Part shown: piece after piece, positions 1,384 to 45,403 of the stretch
Position numbering within the stretch: position 1 is the stretch's first letter
Layout of the letters: the number at the start of each line of letters is the position of its first letter
Assembly (NCBI GenBank): GCA_053919585.1
Contig: CM132801.1
DNA: 64,000 nucleotides
Direction: 5' to 3' (one strand)
Origin: Euprymna scolopes
Taxonomy: Eukaryota
Made by a program: the position numbers and the translations under genes
Notes under the pieces: generated by a model
Seen by the model: only the letters and a program-made list of their open reading frames with translations
The model's database searches: none
What the model was told of the DNA's origin: nothing

Positions 1384-3650
1384 ACACAGTGGTCACCACT
1401 TATCAAGGCCCGGAAGCCACTCAGGGATAAGGGTTATTGCAAGTACATTACGTTAGTGTGGAGATTTGATGAAGTGTTTAATTAAGGGGGCGGTTAATAT
1501 GTTAACGTTGGACTTGAACACATCCAAGTTGTAGTCAGGTGGAAAGCAGGCAGACGAAACAGAGTTCTACAGGCGTGCAGTTCTAAGAAAGAAGCTTTGT
1601 TCATGGAATCCACGTTTTGTTTTAGGCACAGATAAAGAGTGGGGGAAATTTTTCACAGTGGATTCGGCCAGACGAGTGTTTTTTGTGAAAGATTGGCGAG
1701 GGGGGACCAGAGATTGGAGTTCAGACGAGCACCTACCATGGAAATAACGATAAAACAAGGATAGGATCGCAACGTCTCTTCTGTGGGAGAGAGGTTGTAG
1801 GGTAGAGAAAAGAGCATACCCCACTAAGCCACGAAGTCTATTTTATACTCTGTCAAGGCAGGATAGGCTGTTTTTAGCAGCTCCTGCCCAGATATGGCAG
1901 CAGTATTCCATCCTTGGACGTACTTGGCTTTTATATAAATAGAGAATTGCATCAGTAGTGAGATATCTTCTGGCGCGGTAGAAGGATCCCACCATCTTTC
2001 CAGCGACCTTGGCAACAGACTTGATGTACGTGTTCCATTTCAGATCAGGAGTAAAGGTCAAACCAGAAGCTTGTCAAAACACGGGGCCTCACCCAGACGA
2101 GAGCACTCCATCTCAATTGATGCCAGATGGGGATCAGAGCGTTGATGATGTAAGGATAGGAGTTTGGTTTTAGATGCATTAAAGGTAACCAGCCACGTCT
2201 TCCCCCACTGAACCACGCGCTCGAGATCAGAGGAGAGAGAATCAGAGAGAACTTTGTCATTTACAGTCTTTGATGTGTTGCCATAGATGGTCGTGTCATC
2301 AGCATAGATGTCAACGAATGATTTAAGTATGTGTTTAGGGAGGTCATTGATGTAGATCAGGAAGAGAGTTGGGCCCAGGATTGACCCCTGAGGGACTCCA
2401 GCATTAATACTGCAGGCCTCTGATTTTTGTCCATCGACCACTACTCTTATGAGCCTATCGGAGAGAAATGATTTAATGATTGAGAAAACATTTCCAGTTA
2501 TACCGTAGCTGGAAATCTTGTGAAGTAGACCCTTATGCCATACCTTATCGAAGGCTTTTCATATGTCAAGAGAAATTGCCATAGAAAGGAAACCTTTGTC
2601 AGGAGATTCACTAATCCTGTGAGATATAACCGTCAGCACATCTGCGGTAGATCTTGCAGAGCGGAAACCATATTGTGTGTCACTAAGAAGGTTATTCCTG
2701 CTGAGGTGGTTGACTATTTCTCTATTTAATATGGATTCCAGCAACTTACTCATAACACACAGGAGACTTATTGGTCTGTACTGAGAGGGATATGATTTAT
2801 CACCTGAATTCTTAAATACAGGACAAACTGATGAGGTCTTCCAGGGAGTCGGACAGCACTTCTCCTTAAGGCAGCGCTTAAACAGTTTCGTAAGTATGGG
2901 AGCAAGTTCTGGTTGAAGCTTTTTTAACACTATAATTGGGATGCCATCAGGGCCAGTTGCTTTACTGGAATCAAGGTTCTTGATTAGCTTGGCGATCTCA
3001 TGCACGGATATTTGTATTTTACCTAGCGTGTTCTGTGTTATAGGAGGAAATATGGGGAGTTGATGGCCTTCGTCGCATAGGGTAGAATTAGCTGCAAAGT
3101 TCTTTGCAAATAGTTTGGCCTTGTCTGACGCTGACGAGATGACCTCTGGTCCATTGATAATGGTTGGGATAGAACGCACACTTCTGTTCAGGATCCTATT
3201 TGTTATTTGCCAAAACTGGTGGGAACCAAGCCGCTGATCAGCTACCTTGGATTTAACAGACTGGGCATATAGCTCACTTGCATTTTTTATTACTCTTTTA
3301 CAGTGGTTGCTGGCAGCCCTGAAAGCAGCCTTAGTCTCAGTGCATCTATTACGTTGGTAGCTATGAAAAAAGTGATTTCTGTGCGCGATAGCAGCAGCAT
3401 ATTCTGGGGAGAACCATGGCTGGCTGTTAGGTTTTTGTTGGAATTTTTTAGATGGTATGAATTGGTCTATGCCTACAATTAACCATTCGGTCAGATCTGA
3501 TACTATAGAGGACACTTCCTTTTTAAACATGGAGTACAGAGGTAAATCAGATATGAATGTACGGAAGCTTTGCCAGTCAGCCATAGAGTATCGGTATACA
3601 GTACGGTGGAGGGGTACGTCTGGGGTTATTGCCACGCAAATTCCAGGGCA
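1384..3650 (-). mobile_element. CR1/Jockey-group LINE, 5'-truncated, frameshifted ORF2 (RT)
   Basis: ORFs 2559-3686, 2058-2441, 1843-2061, 1567-1824 with KATGPDGIP, YRPISLL, QYGFR, GVPQGSILGP, YADD, RPRMEYCCHIW, LSHRRDVA. 3' UTR ends at an A-tail (T-run ~1369-1383). Confidence 0.95.
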
Positions 3651-4805
3651 GATCAATCGCCGTTGCGAGCTAAAAATAAATGGCAAGCTGCCGTTCTGCT
3701 AACAAATAGTTATAAAAAATGTTGGCGCTTACTGAAAATCTGGCGAAACTTTTTAGTTCCCAGATTTAAGGAAACACCCCCATTTGTTCTCAGTTAGTAA
3801 TCTCTGATGTTCGTCTGCGTGAAAATTCCTGGTATGTACCAATAATACTAAGTAAACTAAAGCGGTAGGGAAGGTGAGGAAAAAAGGAAGAAGAGAAATA
3901 CGACCGTAAAAGAAGATAACTAAGAAAGAAACAAAGCACGAAAACAAAATATACTAGTAAACGAAGGCCGACTGATAGGGTATACTATACATCACAAAAT
4001 ACAAAATAGAACCTTTAAAAACAAAACAAAGCGTAAAAGAGGTAAAAACAAAAATTAAACAACGAAGACTGAAAGAAACATCTTAACACTACTGGCGCAA
4101 TATATGGGAAAGATGATGATTTTAAATGATACTGACTGTCTTAATAATTTTAGTGTGTGTGGATGCCACACTGATGGTTGTGGTCACAATTTATTTAGTG
4201 GTAGTGGTGACAGTGATATCTACAACAGCTTCAACACACTGATATACCCGATAATACCATAGGAAAGTGTAGATCGAAATAGACGGAAAACCGAAAGAGA
4301 AACAAAAGACTAAAGAGAATTTCGCGAGAAAGAAAATGGAAATGAAACGAAACGGACTTTGTTAATCGAATTAACACAAACAACGAAATAAAAATAAAGA
4401 AACAGTAACGAACGAGAAAACAAAAACGGGTAAATCTCCGAAAATAAACGGCTTTGCTATCCAGTCAGGCTGAAGTAAATGTCTCTCTTGATTCGCTTGA
4501 TACGAAAGTTGCAGCGTCAATCTAATAAGTTGCTAGAGCACATGCCACTGACACACAGCGAACAAGAAATGGTGATATGTCCCTATGTCAGTAAGGGATG
4601 GTGTGTAACGTATGATTAGCATGAACTCATATCATTCTATCTCTTCACCATCTCTTCATTTCTTCATCTTCTATCATCAGGCTTCAGTTTTTTCTTCACA
4701 TATCTATCCATTTTTACGCATCACACTGAATATATATAGATGTGTGTATGAAAGTGTATATGTATACACACACGTGTGTATATATATACACGTGTGTGTA
4801 CATAC

Positions 4806-21286: not shown

Positions 21287-21345
21287 TGTTGAGCTGGATT
21301 AAATCCGACGATATGAAATAAAATGGAGGTGGAAGGACCTGGATA

Positions 21346-21384
21346 CTCAACGTTTCGCCCGATTTATGCGGGCTTCTTCAAGAG
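21346..21384 (-). ncRNA. Minimal type I hammerhead (Penelope-type)
   Basis: CTC TTGAAGA a GCCC gcataaatc GGGC GAAA CG TT GAG; palindrome AACGTT. Confidence 0.75.
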
Positions 21385-21482
21385 GGATGGTCATTGACGA
21401 GAGAGTCGGAGGATTGGGACGTTGCTCTCCCCCATCATTATATATAGCCCCAATCCTCCGACTCTCTCGTCAATGACCATCC

Positions 21483-21521
21483 CTCTTGAAGAAGCCCACA
21501 TAAATCGGGCGAAACGTTGAG
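21483..21521 (+). ncRNA. Minimal type I hammerhead (Penelope-type)
   Basis: CTC TTGAAGA a GCCC acataaatc GGGC GAAA CG TT GAG. Confidence 0.75.
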
Positions 21522-21546
21522 TATCCAGGTCCTTCCACCTCTATTT

Positions 21547-21604
<58 letters not shown>

Positions 21605-21745
21605 TTTGTTGTTGATTTTTTTAACGATATTAAGGTTAACGTCTCAGCCTCGGAGATCCGGTGTTTTTTTTTATTAGAAAGTCGCCCATTTTTTATTTGG
21701 ACATATTTTTTATTTGTTTATTTATTATTTTTAAAAACAGTAATA

Positions 21746-21787
21746 TACGGGCACGCGTGTTTCAGAGCCCTACTCCCCTTCAGCGTA
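21746..21787 (-). ncRNA. Type I hammerhead motif (family 2, copy A; A9>G, U16.1>C)
   Basis: TACG CTGAAGG GGAG taggg CTCT GAAA CACGCGTG CC CGTA. Confidence 0.7.
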
Positions 21788-22055
21788 GTTTAAATCTTGT
21801 TGGGATTCGAACCCCGGACCTTATGTATTTCAGTCCAGCGCCCTAACCCATTACGCTATGATGACATAGACAATTTACTGTTTTAGTTTTTTTTTTATCG
21901 TTTATCTGTTTACATAGTTTTGTTGTTGATTTTTTAAACGATATTAAGGTTAACGTCTCCGCCTCGGAGATCCGGTGTTTTTCTTAGAAAGTCGCCCATT
22001 TTTTATTTGGACGTATTTTTTATTTATTTATTTATTATTTTTTAAAACAGTAATT

Positions 22056-22097
22056 TATGGACACGCGTGTTTCAGAGCCCTACTACTCTTCAGCGTA
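22056..22097 (-). ncRNA. Type I hammerhead motif (family 2, copy B; intact core)
   Basis: TACG CTGAAGA GtAG taggg CTCT GAAA CACGCGTG TC CaTA; palindrome ACACGCGTGT. Confidence 0.75.
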
Positions 22098-22635
22098 GCT
22101 GGACTGTTGTTGGTATTTGAACCCCGGACCTTATGTATTTCAGTCCAGCGCCCTAACCCATTACGCTATAATGACATAGACAATTTACTGTTTAGTTGTT
22201 ATCGTTTATCTGTTTACGTAGTTTGTTGTTGANNNNNNNNNNNNNNNNNNNNNNNNNNNNNNNNNNNNNNNNNNNNNNNNNNNNNNNNNNNNNNNNNNNN
22301 NNNNNNNNNNNNNNNNNNNNNNNNNNNNNNNNNNNNNNNNNNNNNNNNNNNNNNNNNNNNNGTATGAGGTTCCGCCAAAACAACCAAGTTGTTCGGAAAT
22401 CCAGAGAAGATTTGTTTATAGTGGTGAAGACCTTGTGTAGAACCATCCACACTTTTTGGTATTACTGCTGACCTTTGTCGGTGCAGACAACTGCCACAGG
22501 ACAGAGTATACAGTAAACCGCAGGTTTTTACATCAGAATAGATGTCTTAACGAAGACTGGGGGTGAGTCTCTCCCAGTGAATTAATGCGCCCTCAGATAC
22601 CAACCTGGAAATTTCTACGACTCGACGTGGGGTAC

Positions 22636-22745
22636 ACACAGCACCTAGACTGCCCAAATGGTCACCCATCTTGTACTGGCCAGGCTCAACGTGCCTTAAC
22701 TTCTGTGATCTGGCGAGAATCGGTGTGTCAACGAGATTGTGTCGT

Positions 22746-22747
<2 letters not shown>
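22636..22747 (-). pseudogene. 5S rRNA-derived sequence (SINE3-like head or pseudogene)
   Basis: acgac..cgttgacacaccgattctcgccagatcacagaagttaag..gagcctggccagtac..gatgggtgacc..ggtgctgt matches the metazoan 5S layout. Confidence 0.85.
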
Positions 22748-22808
<61 letters not shown>

Positions 22809-26071: not shown

Positions 26072-26830
26072 CATTTATACGAATGTTTATATATATTTTT
26101 TAAAACTTACACTCTAACCTATCATGGTTTTAACATTATAAAATAAGTTAATATTAAGTAAACTACTGTTGCTTATTCTTAAAAAATATTTTATTTATTA
26201 TTTCTCCCAACGTTTTTGAAGTATAACTTTAATTTGTATGTTTAATAGTATTTTTAATTACTTATTGAATATATTTACCGTTTATATTTTCTTATTTTTA
26301 TGAAAAGTCTTATAATTTTTTTTTATATCATTGCTCGCTCTTTATTATTGCTATCATGATTTTAAACGATAATGACTATCAGTATTATTAGATTACATTA
26401 TTATATATAAGTCTCTATTTCATGTCCATACCTTATATCTTTTCTTTATTTTCTTATTGCTATTTATGTTATAATTAACTCACTAGAAGTATTCACACAA
26501 GCCATCATCAAAGGTTGTTCTTTGAGAATAACTTGTGGTGTTTCCTGGAGTCTGAGTGACAACAAGTTTCCCCAGATTTCCAGTACTCTCCGCCTCCAAA
26601 TGTCGTTGTTAGAGAAAAAAGGAGTCGAATCATTACTTGTCTTATGTTCATTGCGACATAATCTGCTACAACGTGTTGTATCTACGTGTGTAAACATGTG
26701 TAACGATACAATAGTAGTCCATTTATAAAAAAGTCTTTCTGTTATTTTAAAAGACTAGGGGAATGGAAAATGAAAAAAAAGAACGAGGTATTAGGAAAAA
26801 AACAAAAAGGTTGTAGCAAGATGTACACCC

Positions 26831-26889
<59 letters not shown>

Positions 26890-26893
<4 letters not shown>

Positions 26894-26944
26894 TACACAT
26901 ACAGTACTGTTTCGCTGTTTCACAGCTCATCAGTGGGGCTAGAC
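26890..26944 (-). ncRNA. Type I hammerhead (family 3, intact core)
   Basis: CA CTGATGA GCTGT gaa ACAGC GAAA CAGTACTG TA TG; palindrome ACAGTACTGT. Confidence 0.8.
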
Positions 26945-27171
26945 AAGCAATTACCTCGAGCCAGGATCGAGACCCGACTGCCCAAAAAACAGTCGGGGCT
27001 CTTAACCATTGCGCTATTCGACTGTTGCTATGCTGACAGCAAATTAACAATGTTTTGACATTGTCCAAATACCTAAGCTCAATTTGTTTACACAAAGAGC
27101 ATCGCTTAATACGCTAATGGGGACTTGTATATCTCTTCCCAATATTCTCAACCCAAGATAGGGAGCATTAT

Positions 27172-27227
27172 AGTCATCCACAGACAGTACTGGTTCGCTG
27201 TTTCACAGCTCATTAGTGCGGCTAGAC
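27172..27227 (-). ncRNA. Type I hammerhead (family 3, core mutated, stems intact)
   Basis: gtctag CCGCA CTaATGA GCTGT gaa ACAGC GAAc CAGTACTG TC TGTGG atgac; extended bulged stem I. Confidence 0.7.
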
Positions 27228-28434
27228 AAGCAACTACCTCAAGCCAGGATTGAAACCCGACTATATATTTGTGCGTGTGCTATCAAAGAGTAAATCTTTA
27301 ACAAAGTAGAGCTTATCCAGATAAAAAAAAACCAACACTATTAAGAGGAAGAAGCAGTAATATTAAATTAAAAATGAGGAATATGTAAGTTTGTATCATC
27401 AAAACAATAAGAGGAAAATTAAGAAAAAAAAGACATCTTTAGGTAAATGCTTCTCATCAGAAGAGGAAAGTGACCAAACTATACAAAACGCAAATATAGA
27501 AAATACTGGCTTAACGACATTTAGATATGAAATAGGGATATTATCTGACAAAAAAATAATTAAAAGTAGGTACAACAGATAAGAGTAAATCGGAAGGGTA
27601 GTATATAAGTAGGTAATAGCAAAAAGAAAAATATGGTTCACTATGAAATAATGGAGATTATTAAAGAGAAATTGAAAAGCTAGGGAAGAGAGATGAAAAA
27701 GTATAGAAAGAATGAAGGAGGATAAAAAAACAGTAATTATACAGAAATGAATAAATGGATAAAAATAAAAAATATGAAACAATCTGATAGTGGAAAAATA
27801 GGATTAGAAAAATGTTCAAAAAGTTTGAAAAAATCAAATAAAAATGTATATATGCAAGTTTCAGTTCGAAATGCCATGGTCTTAAGGGCTGTTTTATTTT
27901 TACTTTTCCCTGTTACTTTTTCTTCTTGTACAAAACAAATATATATCTTGACAAGGACGAGTTTTTTAGTTGAAATATATCTTTCAATACGATGTTTTTA
28001 TTATTTTTTTTTTGCGTTGGATGGCTTCAAAACGTATTAAAAATTATATATGTATACAAGTTCCAGTTCAAAATGTCATGATCTAAAAAGTTTTTCACAC
28101 TTTTCCTTGTTACTTTCCTTGTTGTTCTGATGATATANNNNNNNNNNNNNNNNNNNNNNNNNNNNNNNNNNNNNNNNNNNNNNNNNNNNNNNNNNNNNNN
28201 NNNNNNNNNNNNNNNNNNNNNNNNNNNNNNNNNNNNNNNNNNNNNNNNNNNNNNNNNNNNNNNNNNNNNNNNNNNNNNAAGGGATACAATTTTAAAACCT
28301 AATATTTATTAGAAATAACAACTGTGAAAAGCTGAAATTTTGACAACTGGTAGTCGTTATCATCCATAATAACATACTAAAATTTGAATCATTTGCAAAA
28401 GATAGAAAAGAATTATAACAATTTTATATATATT

Positions 28435-28516
<82 letters not shown>

Positions 28517-28752
28517 ACGTCACTCAAAACGTTGTTTCGATTGTATGCCCGATCGTAAAATACCTTTGTCGAACTATACCTGCCAAACTCAATTTTTACC
28601 TCTCAGCAGCTCATTTTCCCGGCTAAAAACTAAATTGATGTTGTTCTACAGGTTGGAATATCCAATATACAACGTTTCAAATCTGTAGATTAAAAATTGT
28701 CAGAATATTTTGGTATAGATCGTTCCTCTCACACACAAACAAGATCACCTTA

Positions 28753-28814
<62 letters not shown>

Positions 28815-28820
<6 letters not shown>

Positions 28821-29300
28821 GGCAAACATTATTAAAAACAGCAGAGATACCTTGTTTAATGATTCTTTTTTTCATTTTTTCGATCTTTCATAAAAACTTT
28901 TTAACTTCAAGATGGAAGGTATTTACAAATGTTCCATGGTTTACACGAGCGCTTTCGATTCTTTCTTGAATCATCATCAGGTGGAGACAAAATATTAAAA
29001 ATAGAAGTTAAATATATAGTTACGAATGATAAAAAGAGTCAACGAAAAGTCGCTTAAAATATACATTTACTAGTGATAAAAAACTCGATTAAAAATTAGG
29101 ATGATAAAAGGCAATGTTACTAAAACCAGTCGTATACTGGTTATGCTAAACATTTCAGCACATTATTGCTACTTTCAAAAGTAATGCTATTTATAGATGG
29201 GTGCTGGGTTTTTATATATAGTGCTTCAAGTATTTTTAATTTTTTACAGTTACTTTCTCGTTGCAAAATCATGTGTTGTCCACGAGGACCTTTCCCCCCT
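28815..29300 (-). mobile_element. Penelope-like element 3' end: GIY-YIG C-terminal relic plus pseudo-LTR
   Basis: ORF 29141-29347 contains ILQRESNCKKLKILEALYIKTQHPSIN, typical of the PLE GIY-YIG C-terminus; hammerhead ~160 nt downstream. Confidence 0.85.
28944..28983 (-). ncRNA. Minimal type I hammerhead in Penelope pLTR
   Basis: CAC CTGATGA t GATTC aagaaa GAATC GAAA GCGC TC GTG; palindrome AGCGCT. Confidence 0.9.
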
Positions 29301-32300
29301 CTAATCTTAGAAAGGTCCTTTTTTTTCACGACACAATGTTCTATCATTATTGCTAAGCGATGACATGGAAAAAATGGCTTTAACGATGATAGATAAATTA
29401 AAATAACGGTTTCAATTATCGATCATCGGTAATTATCGGGGGTATTCTGAAACAAAACTTAAAATCACCTCCAGACTTATATATTAAAGTTCTGGTAATT
29501 TTAAAGAAAACCTGTTCAGCCGTTTTTGTGTCTATAAGGAACGAACTCACACACACACACACACACACACAAAGTTGCATTTATATAATTGTAGAGATAG
29601 AGATACAGATAATCAGTGCGCAGTTCTATCCTACAGGTTTCAGGTGATGTTCGACGGCGAAGCAAACAGCCTGGCTAGCGTGCGCCAGACACATTAGAAA
29701 AGACTTTAGCAGGCGAGAGATGAGAGAAAAAAGGGTTAGACTAGAGCGTTAGGACACTTTGCCGTGCACGCTTGACACCAGGCATCGTTGCAAGACCGAC
29801 AATAGGACAATCTCTTTCAGCAAACCTCTCAATCGTCGGTTAGCGTGCGTAGCCTCGCTTTCAGTTTCCTCCTTTCTCCGCTCCTCCTGCTATTCCTTTT
29901 TATTATATCACTACTCTTCAAAGATGTGTTTCCTTACCCACGCCATTTTTGTTTGTAGTTGCTACGAATTGATAATATTAGCTGTGTTATTGTTAACGCC
30001 GTTGTTTCCTCTGCCGGTTGTTTTAATACTTGCGCTAGGCATTTATTAGTTTGGTTTATAGCTTGTTTGTTTTCTTCTTTTGCTTTCGTTCTATTTTGTT
30101 TCTTTAAAGCGTATTTCTTGATGCCTATGCTAATGGCGCGGTCGTGATTCTCGCCTACGTTTATATATTTGGACGAAAACTCTGTTAACAAAAAGACCGT
30201 TACTATAACTTTATATTCTACTCTTTTGTTTTGTTTTTGTACTATTTGGTTACCGCTTATCAAGATCAGGAGCCACTCAAGGACAAGAGCTAATGATACA
30301 TAAATAATTACCAACTGAAAAATGAGGAACACTATTGGAGTATCAACATTGATCCATTTTTATTTGTGGGGTAGTTTTTTACAAGAATTTGTAGACATTG
30401 GATTTGAAGAATATCAAGTTGTGATTAGCAAAGAAGCAGTCACAGTGGAATGTGTTCCTAAAACGGGAACTTCTTACAAATAATGTTTGTCCGTGAAATT
30501 TTCCTCTGATGCTAGTCATATAAAGAGAGAAAGGAAAGTTTTTTTTCTCTTGTGTTAGTAAAACGAGTTCTTGCTGCGAATGTCTTGCAAAAAAGGAATC
30601 AAAAATTGAAGTTCATTTAACATATCAACTGAGTTTTACTGTGGCATCATTGCGGCAACCTATGACCTGTCCTGACCCTTCTTCGTTGAGATGAGGTATG
30701 GTCTTGCTTCGTCCCGTGAGGTGCATCAATCCAGGCATTACCTACTTCTTCTAATTGGATGAAGTAATTAGTTTATTGTAAACCCCCTGACATGCCCCTG
30801 CCAGGAATACTGATACCCGCCCTTTGCTATTTTTGTGCTTGGCTAGAGCGATAGGAAGCGAGCAAATACAACAACAAAGTTAGACTTGGAAATTTTGCCT
30901 TAACGTTGTTTTTTTTGTTTTTTAATATTATAAATCATCTATAATAATTTGCATATTATGAACAGAATATCCTATTCAGTTTTTTTCTCAGCGAGGGTAA
31001 AGTTAGGCAAATGTTTACTTTTTTATGTGAAGACTAGCGGGGCGGGGGGGCTTTGTCCAGGCGTAAAATACGCTTGAATATGATATTTTAATTTGTCCCA
31101 GATTTCGTATATATTATTATAGAGTTGTGATTTCAAAAGTAAAAAAGAAGTATTTAAATGCCATCAGCTAGAATTGAAAGTAGCATCCAAAGCTGGTGAT
31201 GTTACCACTGTACTAATAAGAGATACGCATATAAACCGATTAAAAATTAAAAATAAACTAAGATGAGTGTAGAAAATCTTTAATGATGTTTTCAATTTTG
31301 ACCAATTTTTGACCCTTTAAAAAAAATATAAACGGCTCAAGACCCATAAAAAGAACGGTTCATTAAAATTTAAATCATTTGATGCCCCTAACGCCGCTAT
31401 GCGACTTTTAGTTTCGGAGGAGATAGAGTTTGAAAATATCAAGACAGACAGGCCAACAGATAGACAGATATTTATTTTATATATAACATTTATAACGTTT
31501 ATTTATATATAACAAAGATTCCAAAATTTGAAATACTGCGCGTGAAGGTCGGAAAGTACATCGGTCGAAACGTAGTAAAACTAGCAACGAACGTAGGAAT
31601 CGTAGTCCAAATAATCCAAATAATTGTAGGATTATGTAGAAGAAAAATTTAAAAATGTGATTATTAAGATTACAGCCATAGCTCACCCCCTTCCACCACC
31701 ACCACCACCATTCATTTATATATTAAGAGTAGTTGGAGGTTGTGTCTGTCTCTTTCTCACTACGGGAGGATGTAACACCAGGTAAGAAGGTGAGAATTGA
31801 AAAAAACAAGAAGTGTGTTTACTCTGAACCATAAAAATGCCTGAGCAACAACGTCAGCATTTCATGGTGGGGACGCTTCAGGCGATTACTAATACACTAA
31901 CCACTTTTCAAAGAGAAAAGGTAATGCGTGAAATGACGGACCTTCTAGAATTACACTTTATCATACCTCATACCTCATTCAACAGATGCAAGGTAACCAC
32001 ATACTATCTGCATTCAGTTGGTGTTCATCTGGCAGAATCTGGTCCATTGAAGATTGGTTAGAGATTATTTTTGTACCGCTTTTCAATAAAACATTTGTGT
32101 CTTGATATACTATGTATCGATTGGTAGGTCGGTCAGTCGGTCACGCTTAACATGTAAACAGCATTTATAGATTCATCCACGCATTACAATAAGAGGTCCT
32201 GTATGTCCAAGCCGCGTAAAATAGAATGATCATCTATTAAGAATGCCCGTTCCTTTTTGTTTTCTTTTCTTTTTATCATTTTAAAACCATATAATAATGT

Positions 32301-35790: not shown

Positions 35791-35843
35791 TCTTACATGT
35801 GTTTCGTTAAATGTTGAAAATTCACCAAACAACTCATCAGAGA
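35791..35843 (-). ncRNA. Type I hammerhead motif with long loop II (pLTR-like family 5)
   Basis: TCT CTGATGA GTT...AAC GAAA CACaTG TA AGA. Confidence 0.7.
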
Positions 35844-42793: not shown

Positions 42794-42848
42794 GTCTCTG
42801 ATGAGTTGCTAGTTTAATCTATACCATTCAAAGAAACGCGTGTAAGAC
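42794..42848 (+). ncRNA. Type I hammerhead motif, family 5
   Basis: GTCT CTGATGA gTTG...CAAa GAAA CGCGTG TA AGAC; flanks homologous to 35720-35850 and 37800-37930. Confidence 0.65.
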
Positions 42849-43774: not shown

Positions 43775-43985
43775 AATCTCAACCACACCTCTCCTGAGTC
43801 GATATTGCTAAATACCAGTGGCAAGTGGAGGTTCAGGACGACTGGAAACAATGCCGAGATAAGCGGAAAGCATATACAGCGCCTAGAATTCCCAAATGGT
43901 CACCCATTTGGTACTAGCAAGACTCAACGTTGAATAAATTCGGTGATATGATGAGAACCGGTGTGTCAACGCGATTATGTCGCAG
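43775..43985 (-). mobile_element. 5S-derived SINE (SINE3-like)
   Basis: 5S head 43875-43985 (caccggttctcatcatatcaccgaa..agtaccaaatgggtgacc..gggaattctaggcgctgta) plus the shared body. Confidence 0.8.
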
Positions 43986-45403
43986 AATACATACATACAT
44001 ACATGATGATTGCAACGTCTTGTAAGACGAGTGCCACTCCCTCAGATACTTAAAGTCCATGAGCCCAAAAATGACTTCCATCGCCACAGGCCCATTTTTA
44101 TAGACAAAAACCTGAGAGAGTATCTATACACAGATGATGTTACAGAGTCTTAGCTTTGTACGACAGCTAAATCTCTCTCTCGGTTCAAAATGTTGAGATC
44201 CAGTAACAAGCAAGAGCAAGGTAGCCAGCAACAAATTAAACTGCAGACCAGCTTAATGCGGATACTGTTCTCCTGCTTTATGTTTTTTTTTTATATCAGA
44301 GATTTGCTTCTCCTAGAAAGGTTGCCTTCACCACGGCTTACGGGAGTCCTCTCCACCCCAATACACATATACACACACACAAATATACACGGTACTAGTT
44401 GGCCGTTAACCCAGAAAAAGAGTTCATTCGCCCATACATACATACATACATACATACATACATACATACAAACGTTCATACATACATGCATACAAACGTT
44501 CATTCGCCCATACATACATACGTGCATACAAACGTATATGTATATAAGCACGATTTCATCGGTATCCTTCAGTTTCAACAAATTATTATCTTGAGCTCAC
44601 ATAGGCAAGTAAGTATGGAGGTAAGTTGTTAACTATACAGCAGAATGCTGCTCTGTACAGTTTTGGACTCACTTAAGGACTCCGACACCTAATATCCCCT
44701 CAAAGTTAACATCGACGCCTTTCTGTGAAGACTGCAGTCGTTCGCCTTAGGTTACATGCTCAAAACAATAGGAACTTGTCCGCATCGCCAAACCTCGACT
44801 CTGACAACGTCGAAACCAATCATACATACGATTGTCGAGGAGAGAAAAAGTGAATGAACTGCAAAAGAATGTTGCAGACCTCCATCATTAATAAAATAAA
44901 ATGTAAATCATAATAAAGTGATATAGATGCTTGAAGCATTGCATGTAATATATAGATAGAATATAGAAGGTTACCACAATGCAAGTTGAATATTAATAAA
45001 TACTTCATTTAGTCTTCCTTTCCACCCAGTGGTCTAATGTGTGTAACCGTATCCAATAATATATTTTTGAGGTAAAACCTCTTGATCAAAAAGTAAGCAT
45101 TTTTAAATCCCACTACTTATTTTACTATGCATTAAATATCACAGTGACATAATAGCAAATAGATGTAAATTTAAAATGATTAAATAATCGCCGTTTAATT
45201 TAGTTGTTATTATCATATTTATATATGTATTTTGAATTTATTTATTACTGTTATATTTATGTATTTTATACTTATTCATATATTTCAAATTATTTGATGT
45301 GTTAGATTAATTTTAATAAGTTGTTAACATATTAATATAATACAAAGTTAGAATTTATGAATTTATCCCGTTAACGATTATGATTAAACATTTCGTCGAA
45401 GGA

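What the first reader, a model, noticed from the sequence alone, without database searches (positions are those of the whole stretch)
26885..27262. Family 3: 283-nt unit with extended, bulged stem I hammerhead
Stem II GCTGT/ACAGC is perfect in both copies and stem III is ACAGTACTGT. Stem I reads CCGCA/TGTGG plus an internal loop plus GTC/GAC, the geometry that gives loop I-II tertiary contacts in natural fast hammerheads. Lesions differ between the two copies. Caveat: a T6 run in the head (A-run 26984-26989) would terminate Pol III in this copy.
Basis: partly seen in the sequence, partly recalled or inferred. Interest (0 to 1): 0.78.

Follow-up and report, generated by a model that had tools for sequence, protein, structure and literature searches.

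The report
Decayed hammerhead-ribozyme retroelement copy in (TA)n
This is one old, dead copy (1.33 units of 283 nt) of a small non-coding jumping element carrying a self-cutting hammerhead RNA motif behind a tRNA-like piece; it sits in a TA microsatellite and belongs to a known kind of element that this scan has already met many times in this genome.

Summary
Window 26886-27262 is 1.33 head-to-tail units of a 283-nt repeat, with a 94-nt overlap at 89% identity. Each unit end carries a type I hammerhead, read on the minus strand.

Neither hammerhead is intact.
- The downstream copy keeps the full core and helices II and III. Its stem I keeps only 3 of 5 proximal and 2 of 3 distal pairs.
- The upstream copy has all 8 stem I pairs, including the internal loop and the GUC/GAC distal helix. 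Its core has two lesions (G5A, A15.1C).

The "bulged stem I" is the ordinary architecture of animal type I hammerheads, not a special one.

The element is flanked by TA repeats. Its 3' end lies 14 nt past the cleavage site and its 5' end is truncated. Coral retrozymes with the same stem III show the same pattern: fixed 3' end, variable 5' end, AT-rich microsatellite targets.

Best reading: a decayed retrotransposed copy of a non-autonomous hammerhead retroelement (animal retrozyme / Schistosoma SM-alpha type), probably moved by Penelope-like elements.

The tRNA-like head is weak, and its T6 run blocks Pol III in this copy.

The scan has already reported this kind of element repeatedly on other DNA of this genome.

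The parts
26886..27262 (-). Whole insertion: 377 nt = 1.33 tandem units of a 283-nt non-coding repeat
   Evidence: the repeat finder (spacing 283, 94-nt overlap, 89%). blastn one search finds no other copy in the window. No Pfam match for the only ORF across it.
26900..27182 (-). One full monomer, from cleavage site to cleavage site (283 nt, 43.5% GC)
   Evidence: Circular fold MFE -77.8 kcal/mol, z -1.85 against 300 dinucleotide shuffles.
26890..26944 (-). Hammerhead copy A. Core CUGAUGA/GAAA intact, helix II 4-5 bp, helix III hairpin within a 10-nt palindrome, GUA cleavage after 26900. Stem I is damaged: 3/5 proximal and 2/3 distal pairs.
   Evidence: Rfam scores only 22.9 bits, as a Hammerhead_3 permutation, below the gathering score of 48.5.
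27173..27227 (-). Hammerhead copy B. Stem I is complete (CCGCA/UGUGG, internal loop UAG/AU, GUC/GAC). The core is dead: G5A at 27214 and A15.1C at 27193. GUC cleavage triplet ends at 27183.
26964..27016 (-). tRNA-like 'head': A-box-like TAGCGCAATGG (27016-27006) and a degenerate B-box-like GGTCTCGATCC (26974-26964), 42 nt start to start
   Evidence: The D-arm motif is shared with the Family 2 head only. No Rfam tRNA or ARAGORN hit.
26969..27001 (-). Long hairpin in place of an anticodon arm: 8 Watson-Crick pairs plus 3 G-U pairs, closed by U-rich loop. It contains the T6 run at 26984-26989.
   Evidence: circular fold (only T>=4 run in the unit)
27183..27262 (-). 5'-truncated upstream unit (last 80 nt of a unit); the truncation point lies inside the 3' arm of the hairpin
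26886..26899 (-). First 14 nt of a further unit. The element's 3' end falls at the unit's own ACUAUA motif, which merges into (TA)n.
   Evidence: The internal unit reads ...GACTATAATG, the terminal one ...AACTATA(TA)n.
26833..26889 (.). (TA)28 microsatellite abutting the element's 3' end: the target site
   Evidence: TRF
27263..27269 (.). Short ATATAT remnant abutting the element's 5' end: the other half of the target microsatellite

Best explanation
Window 26886-27262 (minus strand) is an old, inactive genomic copy of a short non-coding retroelement of the hammerhead class, the animal non-LTR retrozyme / Schistosoma SM-alpha type.

Shown directly:
- It is 1.33 tandem units of 283 nt.
- Each unit end carries a canonical metazoan type I hammerhead: helix I of 5 bp plus internal loop plus 3 bp, helix II of 4 bp with a 5-nt loop, and a short helix III inside a perfect 10-nt palindrome.
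- A tRNA-like module sits 15-30 nt upstream of the ribozyme.
- TA repeats lie on both sides.
- The 3' end is 14 nt past the cleavage site, and the 5' end is truncated.

Inferred life cycle:
1. The source element was transcribed as a multimer.
2. The hammerheads cut it to 283-nt monomers, probably acting as dimers through the palindromic helix III.
3. The monomers were ligated to circles.
4. A Penelope-like reverse transcriptase/GIY-YIG endonuclease nicked a (TA)n tract.
5. The nick primed on the unit's own UAUA motif about 10 nt downstream of the cleavage site.
6. The enzyme copied the circular or multimeric RNA for 1.33 turns and stopped inside the stable hairpin.

Since insertion the two overlapping parts have diverged by about 11%. 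Different features were lost in each: the core in the upstream copy and stem I in the downstream copy. In this copy the T6 run in the head rules out Pol III read-through, so the locus is a fossil and not a source gene.
For: - Repeat anatomy and hammerhead motifs.
- Non-coding.
- TA repeats on both flanks.
- (TA)n targeting: all 5 hammerhead-motif sites in the window have a (TA)n of at least 8 units within 160 nt downstream in RNA sense, against 5.6% of random positions.
- Comparative set: a metagenome scan for the same core plus stem III found 120 loci and 126 ribozymes with a compensated helix II (GGCC/GGCC), and tandem spacing of 241 nt.
- That set matches the 225/245-nt stony-coral retrozymes, which self-cleave at about 0.8 per min and form circRNAs (PMC7229834).
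- In those loci 57 of 67 complete blocks end at the same unit position, while 5' starts are scattered (0.2-2.8 units, 7 above one unit).
- In the same loci, 48 of 122 ribozymes are followed by (TA)n starting mostly 7-11 nt after the cleavage site.
- Helix III is a perfect palindrome; the predicted homodimer is -36.4 against 2 x -12.8 kcal/mol.
- The literature reports Penelope-like elements with hammerheads, partial tandems and (TA)n bias (PMC8557442). It also proposes retrozymes as non-autonomous Penelope derivatives (PMC7229834; bioRxiv 10.64898/2026.07.22.740005).
- Polarising the 10 differences gives at least 4 derived states in copy B (two CpG decays, two core hits) and at least 3 in copy A (all in stem I). 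That is a balanced decay, as expected for two parts born identical.
Against: - Only one insertion of this family is visible. Repetitiveness, mobility and the consensus are therefore inferred from architecture and from other families or phyla.
- Rfam does not reach its gathering score for any hammerhead model (22.9 against 48.5 bits).
- The Penelope link is indirect. The nearby endonuclease-like 68-aa ORF (29141-29347, minus) has no Pfam hit, and the one clear reverse transcriptase in the window is LINE-1-like.
- The circular monomer is only mildly more structured than shuffles (z -1.85).
- Using hammerhead fit to polarise the differences is partly circular.
Confidence: 0.75

Rival explanations
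1. It is a remnant of a local satellite-type tandem array, like newt satellite 2. On this reading it arose and decayed by DNA-level duplication and deletion at this locus and was not inserted through RNA.
For: The arrangement is tandem and head to tail. Hammerhead satellites were historically described this way (PMC7229834).
Against: - Only 1.33 units are present, bounded on both sides by TA repeats.
- The 3' end falls at a defined unit position next to the ribozyme.
- The same fixed-3'/variable-5' pattern is seen in 67 coral insertions.
- Four other hammerhead sites in the window are also linked to (TA)n.
Confidence: 0.08
2. It is the terminal pseudo-LTR fragment of an autonomous Penelope-like element, a 5'-truncated partial tandem, and not a separate non-autonomous family.
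For: Penelope-like elements carry hammerheads in their pseudo-LTRs, insert as partial tandems and favour (TA)n (PMC8557442; PMC4209133). A Penelope-like 3' end with a hammerhead motif, ending in (TA)n, lies 1.9 kb away on the same strand.
Against: - The unit is only 283 nt.
- It has no similarity to that neighbouring relic or to any ORF-bearing sequence in the window.
- It has no coding signal.
- It carries a tRNA-like module that is not a known Penelope feature.
Confidence: 0.1
3. It is an ordinary tRNA-derived Pol III SINE mobilised by a LINE. On this reading the hammerhead-like motif is an incidental passenger with no role.
For: An A-box-like motif and a B-box-like motif sit at tRNA-like spacing. 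A LINE-1-like reverse transcriptase relic is in the window.
Against: - There is no A-rich or LINE-like 3' tail.
- The tandem >1-unit structure and the (TA)n target are not LINE/SINE features.
- The T6 run lies between the boxes.
- tRNA models do not match.
- The complete core plus three helices, repeated, is far beyond chance.
Confidence: 0.05

Closest known systems
Metazoan non-LTR retrozymes (Cervera & de la Pena 2020, PMC7229834), e.g. the 225/245-nt Acropora units
   Same: - Short (150-450 nt) non-coding tandem units, each with a type I hammerhead.
- GC below 50%.
- The GAAAC-AGUACUGU-H helix III / cleavage context is identical to that of the coral-type loci L001-L120, and helix II has the same size (4 bp plus 5-nt loop).
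- The 3' end lies about 10 nt past the cleavage site, next to AT-rich microsatellites, and the 5' end is variable.
   Different: - The body and helix I/II sequences are unrelated.
- A tRNA-like module lies just upstream of the ribozyme, which that paper does not describe for coral, mussel or axolotl retrozymes (its only mentions of tRNA concern tRNA ligase and tRNA processing).
- Here only 1.33 decayed units are present.
- Expression as circRNA was not tested.
Schistosoma SM-alpha / Sj-alpha SINE-like elements (Ferbeyre et al. 1998, as cited in PMC8490949)
   Same: A short (about 335 nt against 283 nt) non-coding repeat that combines a SINE-like module with an active-type canonical type I hammerhead. 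It occurs both tandem and dispersed.
   Different: - No sequence similarity was tested, because no SM-alpha sequence was on hand.
- The host phylum is different.
- In this copy the promoter-like head is degenerate and interrupted by T6.
- That SM-alpha has a Pol III promoter is from my own knowledge of the 1998 paper, not read here.
Minimal/dimeric hammerheads of Penelope-like elements (PMC4209133; PMC8557442)
   Same: - Palindromic short helix III that allows a dimeric double hammerhead.
- Ribozyme near the element's 3' end.
- Partial tandems.
- (TA)n insertion bias.
   Different: - This ribozyme has canonical helix sizes (I 5 bp plus loop, II 4 bp), not the minimal type (helix II 7-8 bp, poorly defined loop 1).
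- There is no reverse transcriptase/endonuclease ORF.
- There is no similarity to the Penelope-like relic at 28750-29350.
'Family 2' 310-nt array of the same window (21599-22232, minus strand)
   Same: Same strand logic, a 3' end in (TA)n, and a tRNA-like head with the shared D-arm motif TAGCGYAATGGNTNAG upstream of a hammerhead-like motif.
   Different: - The units are otherwise unalignable.
- The Family 2 head has a near-perfect B box (GGTTCGAATCC).
- Its 3' end lies about 155 nt, not 14 nt, past the ribozyme.

Membership tests
Hammerhead ribozyme, type I | Conserved core CUGANGA ... GAAA | tested here: met
   Copy A has CUGAUGA (26933-26927) and GAAA (26913-26910). Copy B fails, with CUAAUGA and GAAC.
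Hammerhead ribozyme, type I | Three helices around the core, with II and III closed by loops and I open; NUH cleavage triplet | tested here: met
   Helix II is 4-5 bp and helix III 3-4 bp in both copies. The triplets are GUA and GUC. Helix I has 8/8 pairs in copy B but only 5/8 in copy A. No single copy has everything.
Hammerhead ribozyme, type I | Rfam covariance-model score at or above the gathering threshold | tested here: not met
   The best hit is 22.9 bits against 48.5, as a Hammerhead_3 permutation with three mispaired stem III positions. The type I model scored lower.
Hammerhead ribozyme, type I | Self-cleavage at the predicted site | not testable with these tools
   Needs in vitro transcription or RNA end mapping.
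Metazoan non-LTR retrozyme | Tandem units of about 150-450 bp, each with a type I hammerhead, no LTR/PBS/PPT/ORF, GC below 50% | tested here: met
   283-nt spacing and 1.33 units; 43.5% GC; no coding signal.
Metazoan non-LTR retrozyme | Dispersed multi-copy family in the genome | not testable with these tools
Collection scans gave 0.
Metazoan non-LTR retrozyme | Expressed as linear and circular monomer RNA | not testable with these tools
SM-alpha-like / tRNA-derived Pol III SINE head | A box and B box at tRNA-like spacing | tested here: inconclusive
   The A-box-like TAGCGCAATGG has 1 mismatch to TRGCNNAGTGG. The B-box-like GGTCTCGATCC has 4 mismatches, or 1 indel plus 1 mismatch, to GGTTCGANNCC. 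Copy B reads GGTTTCAATCC (2 mismatches). Spacing is 42 nt start to start.
SM-alpha-like / tRNA-derived Pol III SINE head | tRNA-like fold recognised by tRNA models | tested here: not met
   ARAGORN finds none. There is no Rfam tRNA hit at E<=10 in a 156-nt search. The much clearer Family 2 head also fails, so this test has low power.
SM-alpha-like / tRNA-derived Pol III SINE head | No Pol III terminator (T>=4) between the promoter and the ribozyme | tested here: not met
   A T6 run at 26989-26984 lies between the A and B boxes. Whether the family consensus has it is unknown.
Penelope-dependent non-autonomous element | Insertion into (TA)n, fixed 3' end, 5' truncation or partial tandem | tested here: met
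   Flanks. Five of five hammerhead sites lie near (TA)n. Analogous coral set. Literature: PMC8557442.
Penelope-dependent non-autonomous element | Sequence relationship to the pseudo-LTR of a Penelope-like element in the same genome | tested here: not met
   No similarity to the Penelope-like 3' relic at 28750-29350 or to anything else in the window. Other lineages in the genome could not be tested.

The most novel reading that the evidence does not exclude
The tRNA-like module may not be a Pol III promoter at all. The T6 run would then belong to the family consensus.

Instead it could be a tRNA mimic placed next to the hammerhead cleavage/ligation site. Its role would be to recruit the tRNA-splicing ligase (RtcB type) or other tRNA-handling proteins, to circularise or stabilise the 283-nt RNA, or to be recognised by the Penelope-type reverse transcriptase.

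That would explain two things: unrelated families in this genome (Family 2 and Family 3) keep the same D-arm motif just upstream of their ribozymes, and a Pol III-incompatible T-run is tolerated.
Probability: 0.1. Interest if true: 0.7.

Novelty: new member of a known kind. Interest (0 to 1): 0.3.

Why it matters
Taken alone, this locus is a fossil and adds little.

Taken with the other families in the window, and with this scan's earlier notes on the genome, it adds one more lineage to a large, apparently undescribed radiation of tRNA-headed hammerhead retroelements in a mollusc, said to be a cephalopod. Only four papers in the searchable library hold both 'hammerhead ribozyme' and 'cephalopod', and the two that the search listed do not describe such elements. 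One cuttlefish genome paper reports 'almost no SINEs'.

Two small points came out of the comparison with the coral-type loci. First, both phyla share an identical helix III / cleavage context. Second, in both, a short UAUA-type motif about 10 nt past the cleavage site is where the element joins the (TA)n target. That fits microhomology priming on an RNA that spans the cleavage site, meaning a circular or uncleaved template. This gives a testable detail for the still unproven retrozyme mobilisation model.

Tried and rejected
- **Type III reading.** Rfam's best alignment is Hammerhead_3 over 26983-26904, with cleavage at the GUC inside the hairpin. I rejected it: three of seven stem III pairs are non-standard, and it ignores the perfect hairpin and the 283-nt register.
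- **Other Family 3 copies.** blastn within the window found none. Exact hammerhead strings gave 0 in viral contigs and 0 in metagenome contigs. The gapped pattern gave 0 in viral contigs. The search of earlier findings by sequence came back blank.
- **tRNA identity.** ARAGORN and Rfam found nothing. The control on the clearer Family 2 head also failed, so the test is weak.
- **Strict type I descriptor.** A descriptor needing at least 4 stem I pairs with at most 1 mismatch missed both copies, as expected from their lesions. It returned one probable false positive at 56083-55997.
- **Coding potential.** The 117-aa ORF 26742-27095 (minus) runs through the (TA)n tract and has no family match.
- **Plus-strand ribozyme.** There is no CUGANGA on the plus strand.
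- **Penelope helper nearby.** The 68-aa ORF at 29141-29347 looks like the end of a GIY-YIG domain by eye, but Pfam gives nothing. The reverse transcriptase at 2058-3686 is LINE-1-like.
- **Covariance model from the coral loci.** I did not build one. 109 of 126 cores are identical and they were fished with a pattern taken from this element, so the test would be circular.
- **Large protein searches.** Not used; nothing here rests on a protein.
- **N stretches.** Left untouched.

Full report
**What is there**

Read on the minus strand, window 26886-27262 is 377 nt of a 283-nt unit in head-to-tail arrangement. The repeat finder pairs 26886-26979 with 27169-27262 at a spacing of 283 and 89% identity over 94 nt. 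TRF did not list it because there are only 1.33 copies. blastn of the element against the whole window finds nothing else. In RNA sense the layout is:
- a 5'-truncated unit (27262 to 27183);
- one full unit from cleavage site to cleavage site (27182 to 26900; 283 nt, 43.5% GC against 34% for the window);
- the first 14 nt of a further unit (26899 to 26886);
- then (TA)28 (26889-26833).

The other flank begins with ATATAT (27263-27269).

**The ribozyme**

Copy A (26944 to 26890) has these parts:
- core CUGAUGA;
- helix II GCUG/CAGC with a 5-nt loop, or 5 bp with a GAA loop;
- GAAA;
- a helix III hairpin inside the perfect 10-nt palindrome ACAGUACUGU;
- cleavage triplet GUA.

Copy B (27227 to 27173) has the same helices and GUC, but its core reads CUAAUGA and GAAC, that is G5A and A15.1C.

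I wrote out the canonical pairing and counted pairs.
- In copy B, stem I is complete: 5 proximal pairs (A-U, C-G, G-U, C-G, C-G), an internal loop of 3 and 2 nt, and 3 distal pairs (GUC/GAC).
- In copy A, only 3 of 5 proximal and 2 of 3 distal pairs remain.

No genomic copy has all features together, and neither should cleave well as it stands.

The motif is far beyond chance:
- the 28-nt hammerhead string has 0 expected and 2 observed matches;
- the core pattern has 0.17 expected and 4 observed;
- a helix-aware relaxed scan gives 2 sites against 0.24 in random sequence, and this is the best one.

Rfam does not reach its thresholds. There is nothing at gathering level. The best local score is 22.9 bits against 48.5, and it comes as a type III permutation whose stem III is poorly paired. 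I reject that alternative reading.

**Is the stem I special?**

No. PMC4209133 describes the canonical metazoan type I hammerhead as follows: helix I of about 6 bp and helix II of 4 bp interacting through loop nucleotides, plus a short helix III with a small palindromic loop that favours a dimeric active form in tandem transcripts. The element fits that description.

The palindrome is perfect. The predicted homodimer through a 10-bp helix III is more stable than two monomers, -36.4 against 2 x -12.8 kcal/mol.

Whether loops I and II make the tertiary contact cannot be decided from two copies. The 5' strand GUC is in both copies. The 3' strand GAC is in one of two. No covariation is available.

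**The head**

Upstream of the ribozyme lies an A-box-like D-arm motif (TAGCGCAATGG, 27016-27006). It is followed by a long hairpin (26969-27001; 8 Watson-Crick plus 3 G-U pairs) and a poor B-box-like motif (26974-26964). The spacing is tRNA-like, 42 nt start to start.

The extended motif TAGCGYAATGGNTNAG occurs only here and in the two units of the window's 'Family 2' array. That array's head aligns with this one mainly in the D-arm and T-arm regions.

ARAGORN and Rfam's tRNA model find nothing. They also miss the much clearer Family 2 head, so the negative result is weak evidence.

The T6 run sits in the hairpin loop, between the two boxes, and is the only T run of 4 or more in the unit. In this copy a Pol III transcript would stop about 40 nt after its start. 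The upstream unit is truncated just 3' of that point, so the window cannot say whether T6 is ancestral.

**How it got there**

The flanks are TA repeats. The 3' end falls at the unit's own ACUAUA motif: the internal unit reads GACTATAATG and the terminal one AACTATA followed by (TA)n.

All five hammerhead-motif sites in the window have a (TA)n of 8 or more repeats within 160 nt downstream in RNA sense. Only 5.6% of random positions do. The five sites are this element, Family 2, a Penelope-like 3' end at about 28950, and two copies of another family at 35794 and 42844.

To see how such elements behave, I scanned metagenome contigs for the same core and helix III with a free helix II.
- The scan gave 120 loci and 126 ribozymes. 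Of these, 109 have an identical core and a compensated helix II (GGCC/GGCC).
- Tandem spacing is 241 nt in the loci that hold two ribozymes (L017, L031).
- This matches the 225/245-nt stony-coral retrozymes, which self-cleave at about 0.8 per min and accumulate as circRNAs (PMC7229834). I infer the coral origin from that match; the contigs carry no organism label.
- In these loci 57 of 67 complete blocks end at the same unit position, while 5' starts scatter from 0.2 to 2.8 units, 7 of them above one unit.
- Also, 48 of 122 ribozymes are followed by (TA)n that starts mostly 7-11 nt after the cleavage site. The other 3' flanks shown were mostly AT-rich, several of them simple repeats.

A fixed 3' end, a variable 5' end and a microsatellite target are the marks of target-primed reverse transcription. 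A 3' end that lies beyond the cleavage site means the template spanned that site, so it was a ligated circle or an uncleaved multimer. The 1.33-unit length here fits copying around such a template.

Penelope-like elements have hammerheads in their pseudo-LTRs, insert as partial tandems and prefer (TA)n (PMC8557442). They have been proposed as the helpers of animal retrozymes (PMC7229834; bioRxiv 10.64898/2026.07.22.740005).

The helper link is inferred here. The neighbouring endonuclease-like ORF has no Pfam hit, there is no sequence similarity to that relic, and the only clear reverse transcriptase in the window is LINE-1-like.

**Age and decay**

The two overlapping parts differ at 10 of 94 sites (K2P 0.116). 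If they were copied from one template they were identical at birth.
- Two differences are CpG decays in copy B, and two are its core lesions.
- Three differences are stem I losses in copy A.
- Three are undecided.

This balanced split fits a source element that had a complete ribozyme with the full stem I. Polarising by ribozyme fit is partly circular, though.

**Other properties**

The circular monomer folds to -77.8 kcal/mol. That is only mildly below shuffles: z -1.85, with 10 of 300 shuffles as low. There is no coding signal and no ribozyme core on the plus strand.

**Limits**

I have no data on expression, RNA ends, copy number or the family consensus.

The host identity comes from earlier notes of this scan: a 5.9-Gb mollusc, probably a cephalopod. 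I did not verify it. Those notes also show that the scan has already followed up many tRNA-headed hammerhead families in (TA)n on other DNA of this genome, including a 286-bp one that may or may not be the same family.

**Verdict**

It is an ordinary, dead member of a known kind: the animal non-LTR retrozyme / SM-alpha-like hammerhead retroelement, probably Penelope-dependent. Interest is modest.

Noticed in passing
window 22633-22749 (-) and 43871-43987 (-): Two 5S rRNA-like sequences pass Rfam's gathering score (46.9 and 47.9 bits). Each begins right after a microsatellite, (TA)n at 22750-22805 and (TGTA)n near 44000, and each is followed by non-5S sequence. They look like heads of a 5S-derived SINE, not 5S genes.
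   Followed up: partly
window 35794-35840 (-) and 42798-42844 (+): Two diverged copies of another hammerhead-bearing family lie in opposite orientation. Both have CTGATGAGTTG..., a long AT-rich helix II region, GAAAC and a palindromic ACATGT/GCGTGT. Each ends about 75 nt downstream in a (TA)n tract.
   Followed up: partly
window 28750-29350 (-): A 68-aa ORF (29141-29347) ends in a LEALYIK...P.IN-type motif that resembles the C-terminus of a Penelope GIY-YIG endonuclease. It is followed by a CTGATGA...GAAAG hammerhead-like motif near 28980-28950 and by (TA)n at 28759-28817. Pfam gives no hit for the ORF.
   Followed up: partly
window 2058-3686 (-): A broken reverse-transcriptase ORF pair (RVT_1, E 1e-15 and 2e-7). 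It is closest to LINE-1 ORF2p among solved structures (E 2e-11).
   Followed up: partly
L001-L120 (metagenome contigs Ga01263xx, Ga00998xx, OMLO01...): Contigs in microbial metagenome collections carry what look like host-derived (coral-type) 241-nt hammerhead retrozymes. These show a strictly fixed 3' end about 9-10 nt past the cleavage site. The 3' flanks shown were mostly AT-rich, several of them simple repeats such as (TA)n, (TTAG)n, (CATA)n and (TTA)n.
   Followed up: partly
window 21311-21556: A near-perfect inverted duplication of about 100 nt per arm lies directly downstream of the (TA)n that ends the Family 2 array.
   Followed up: no
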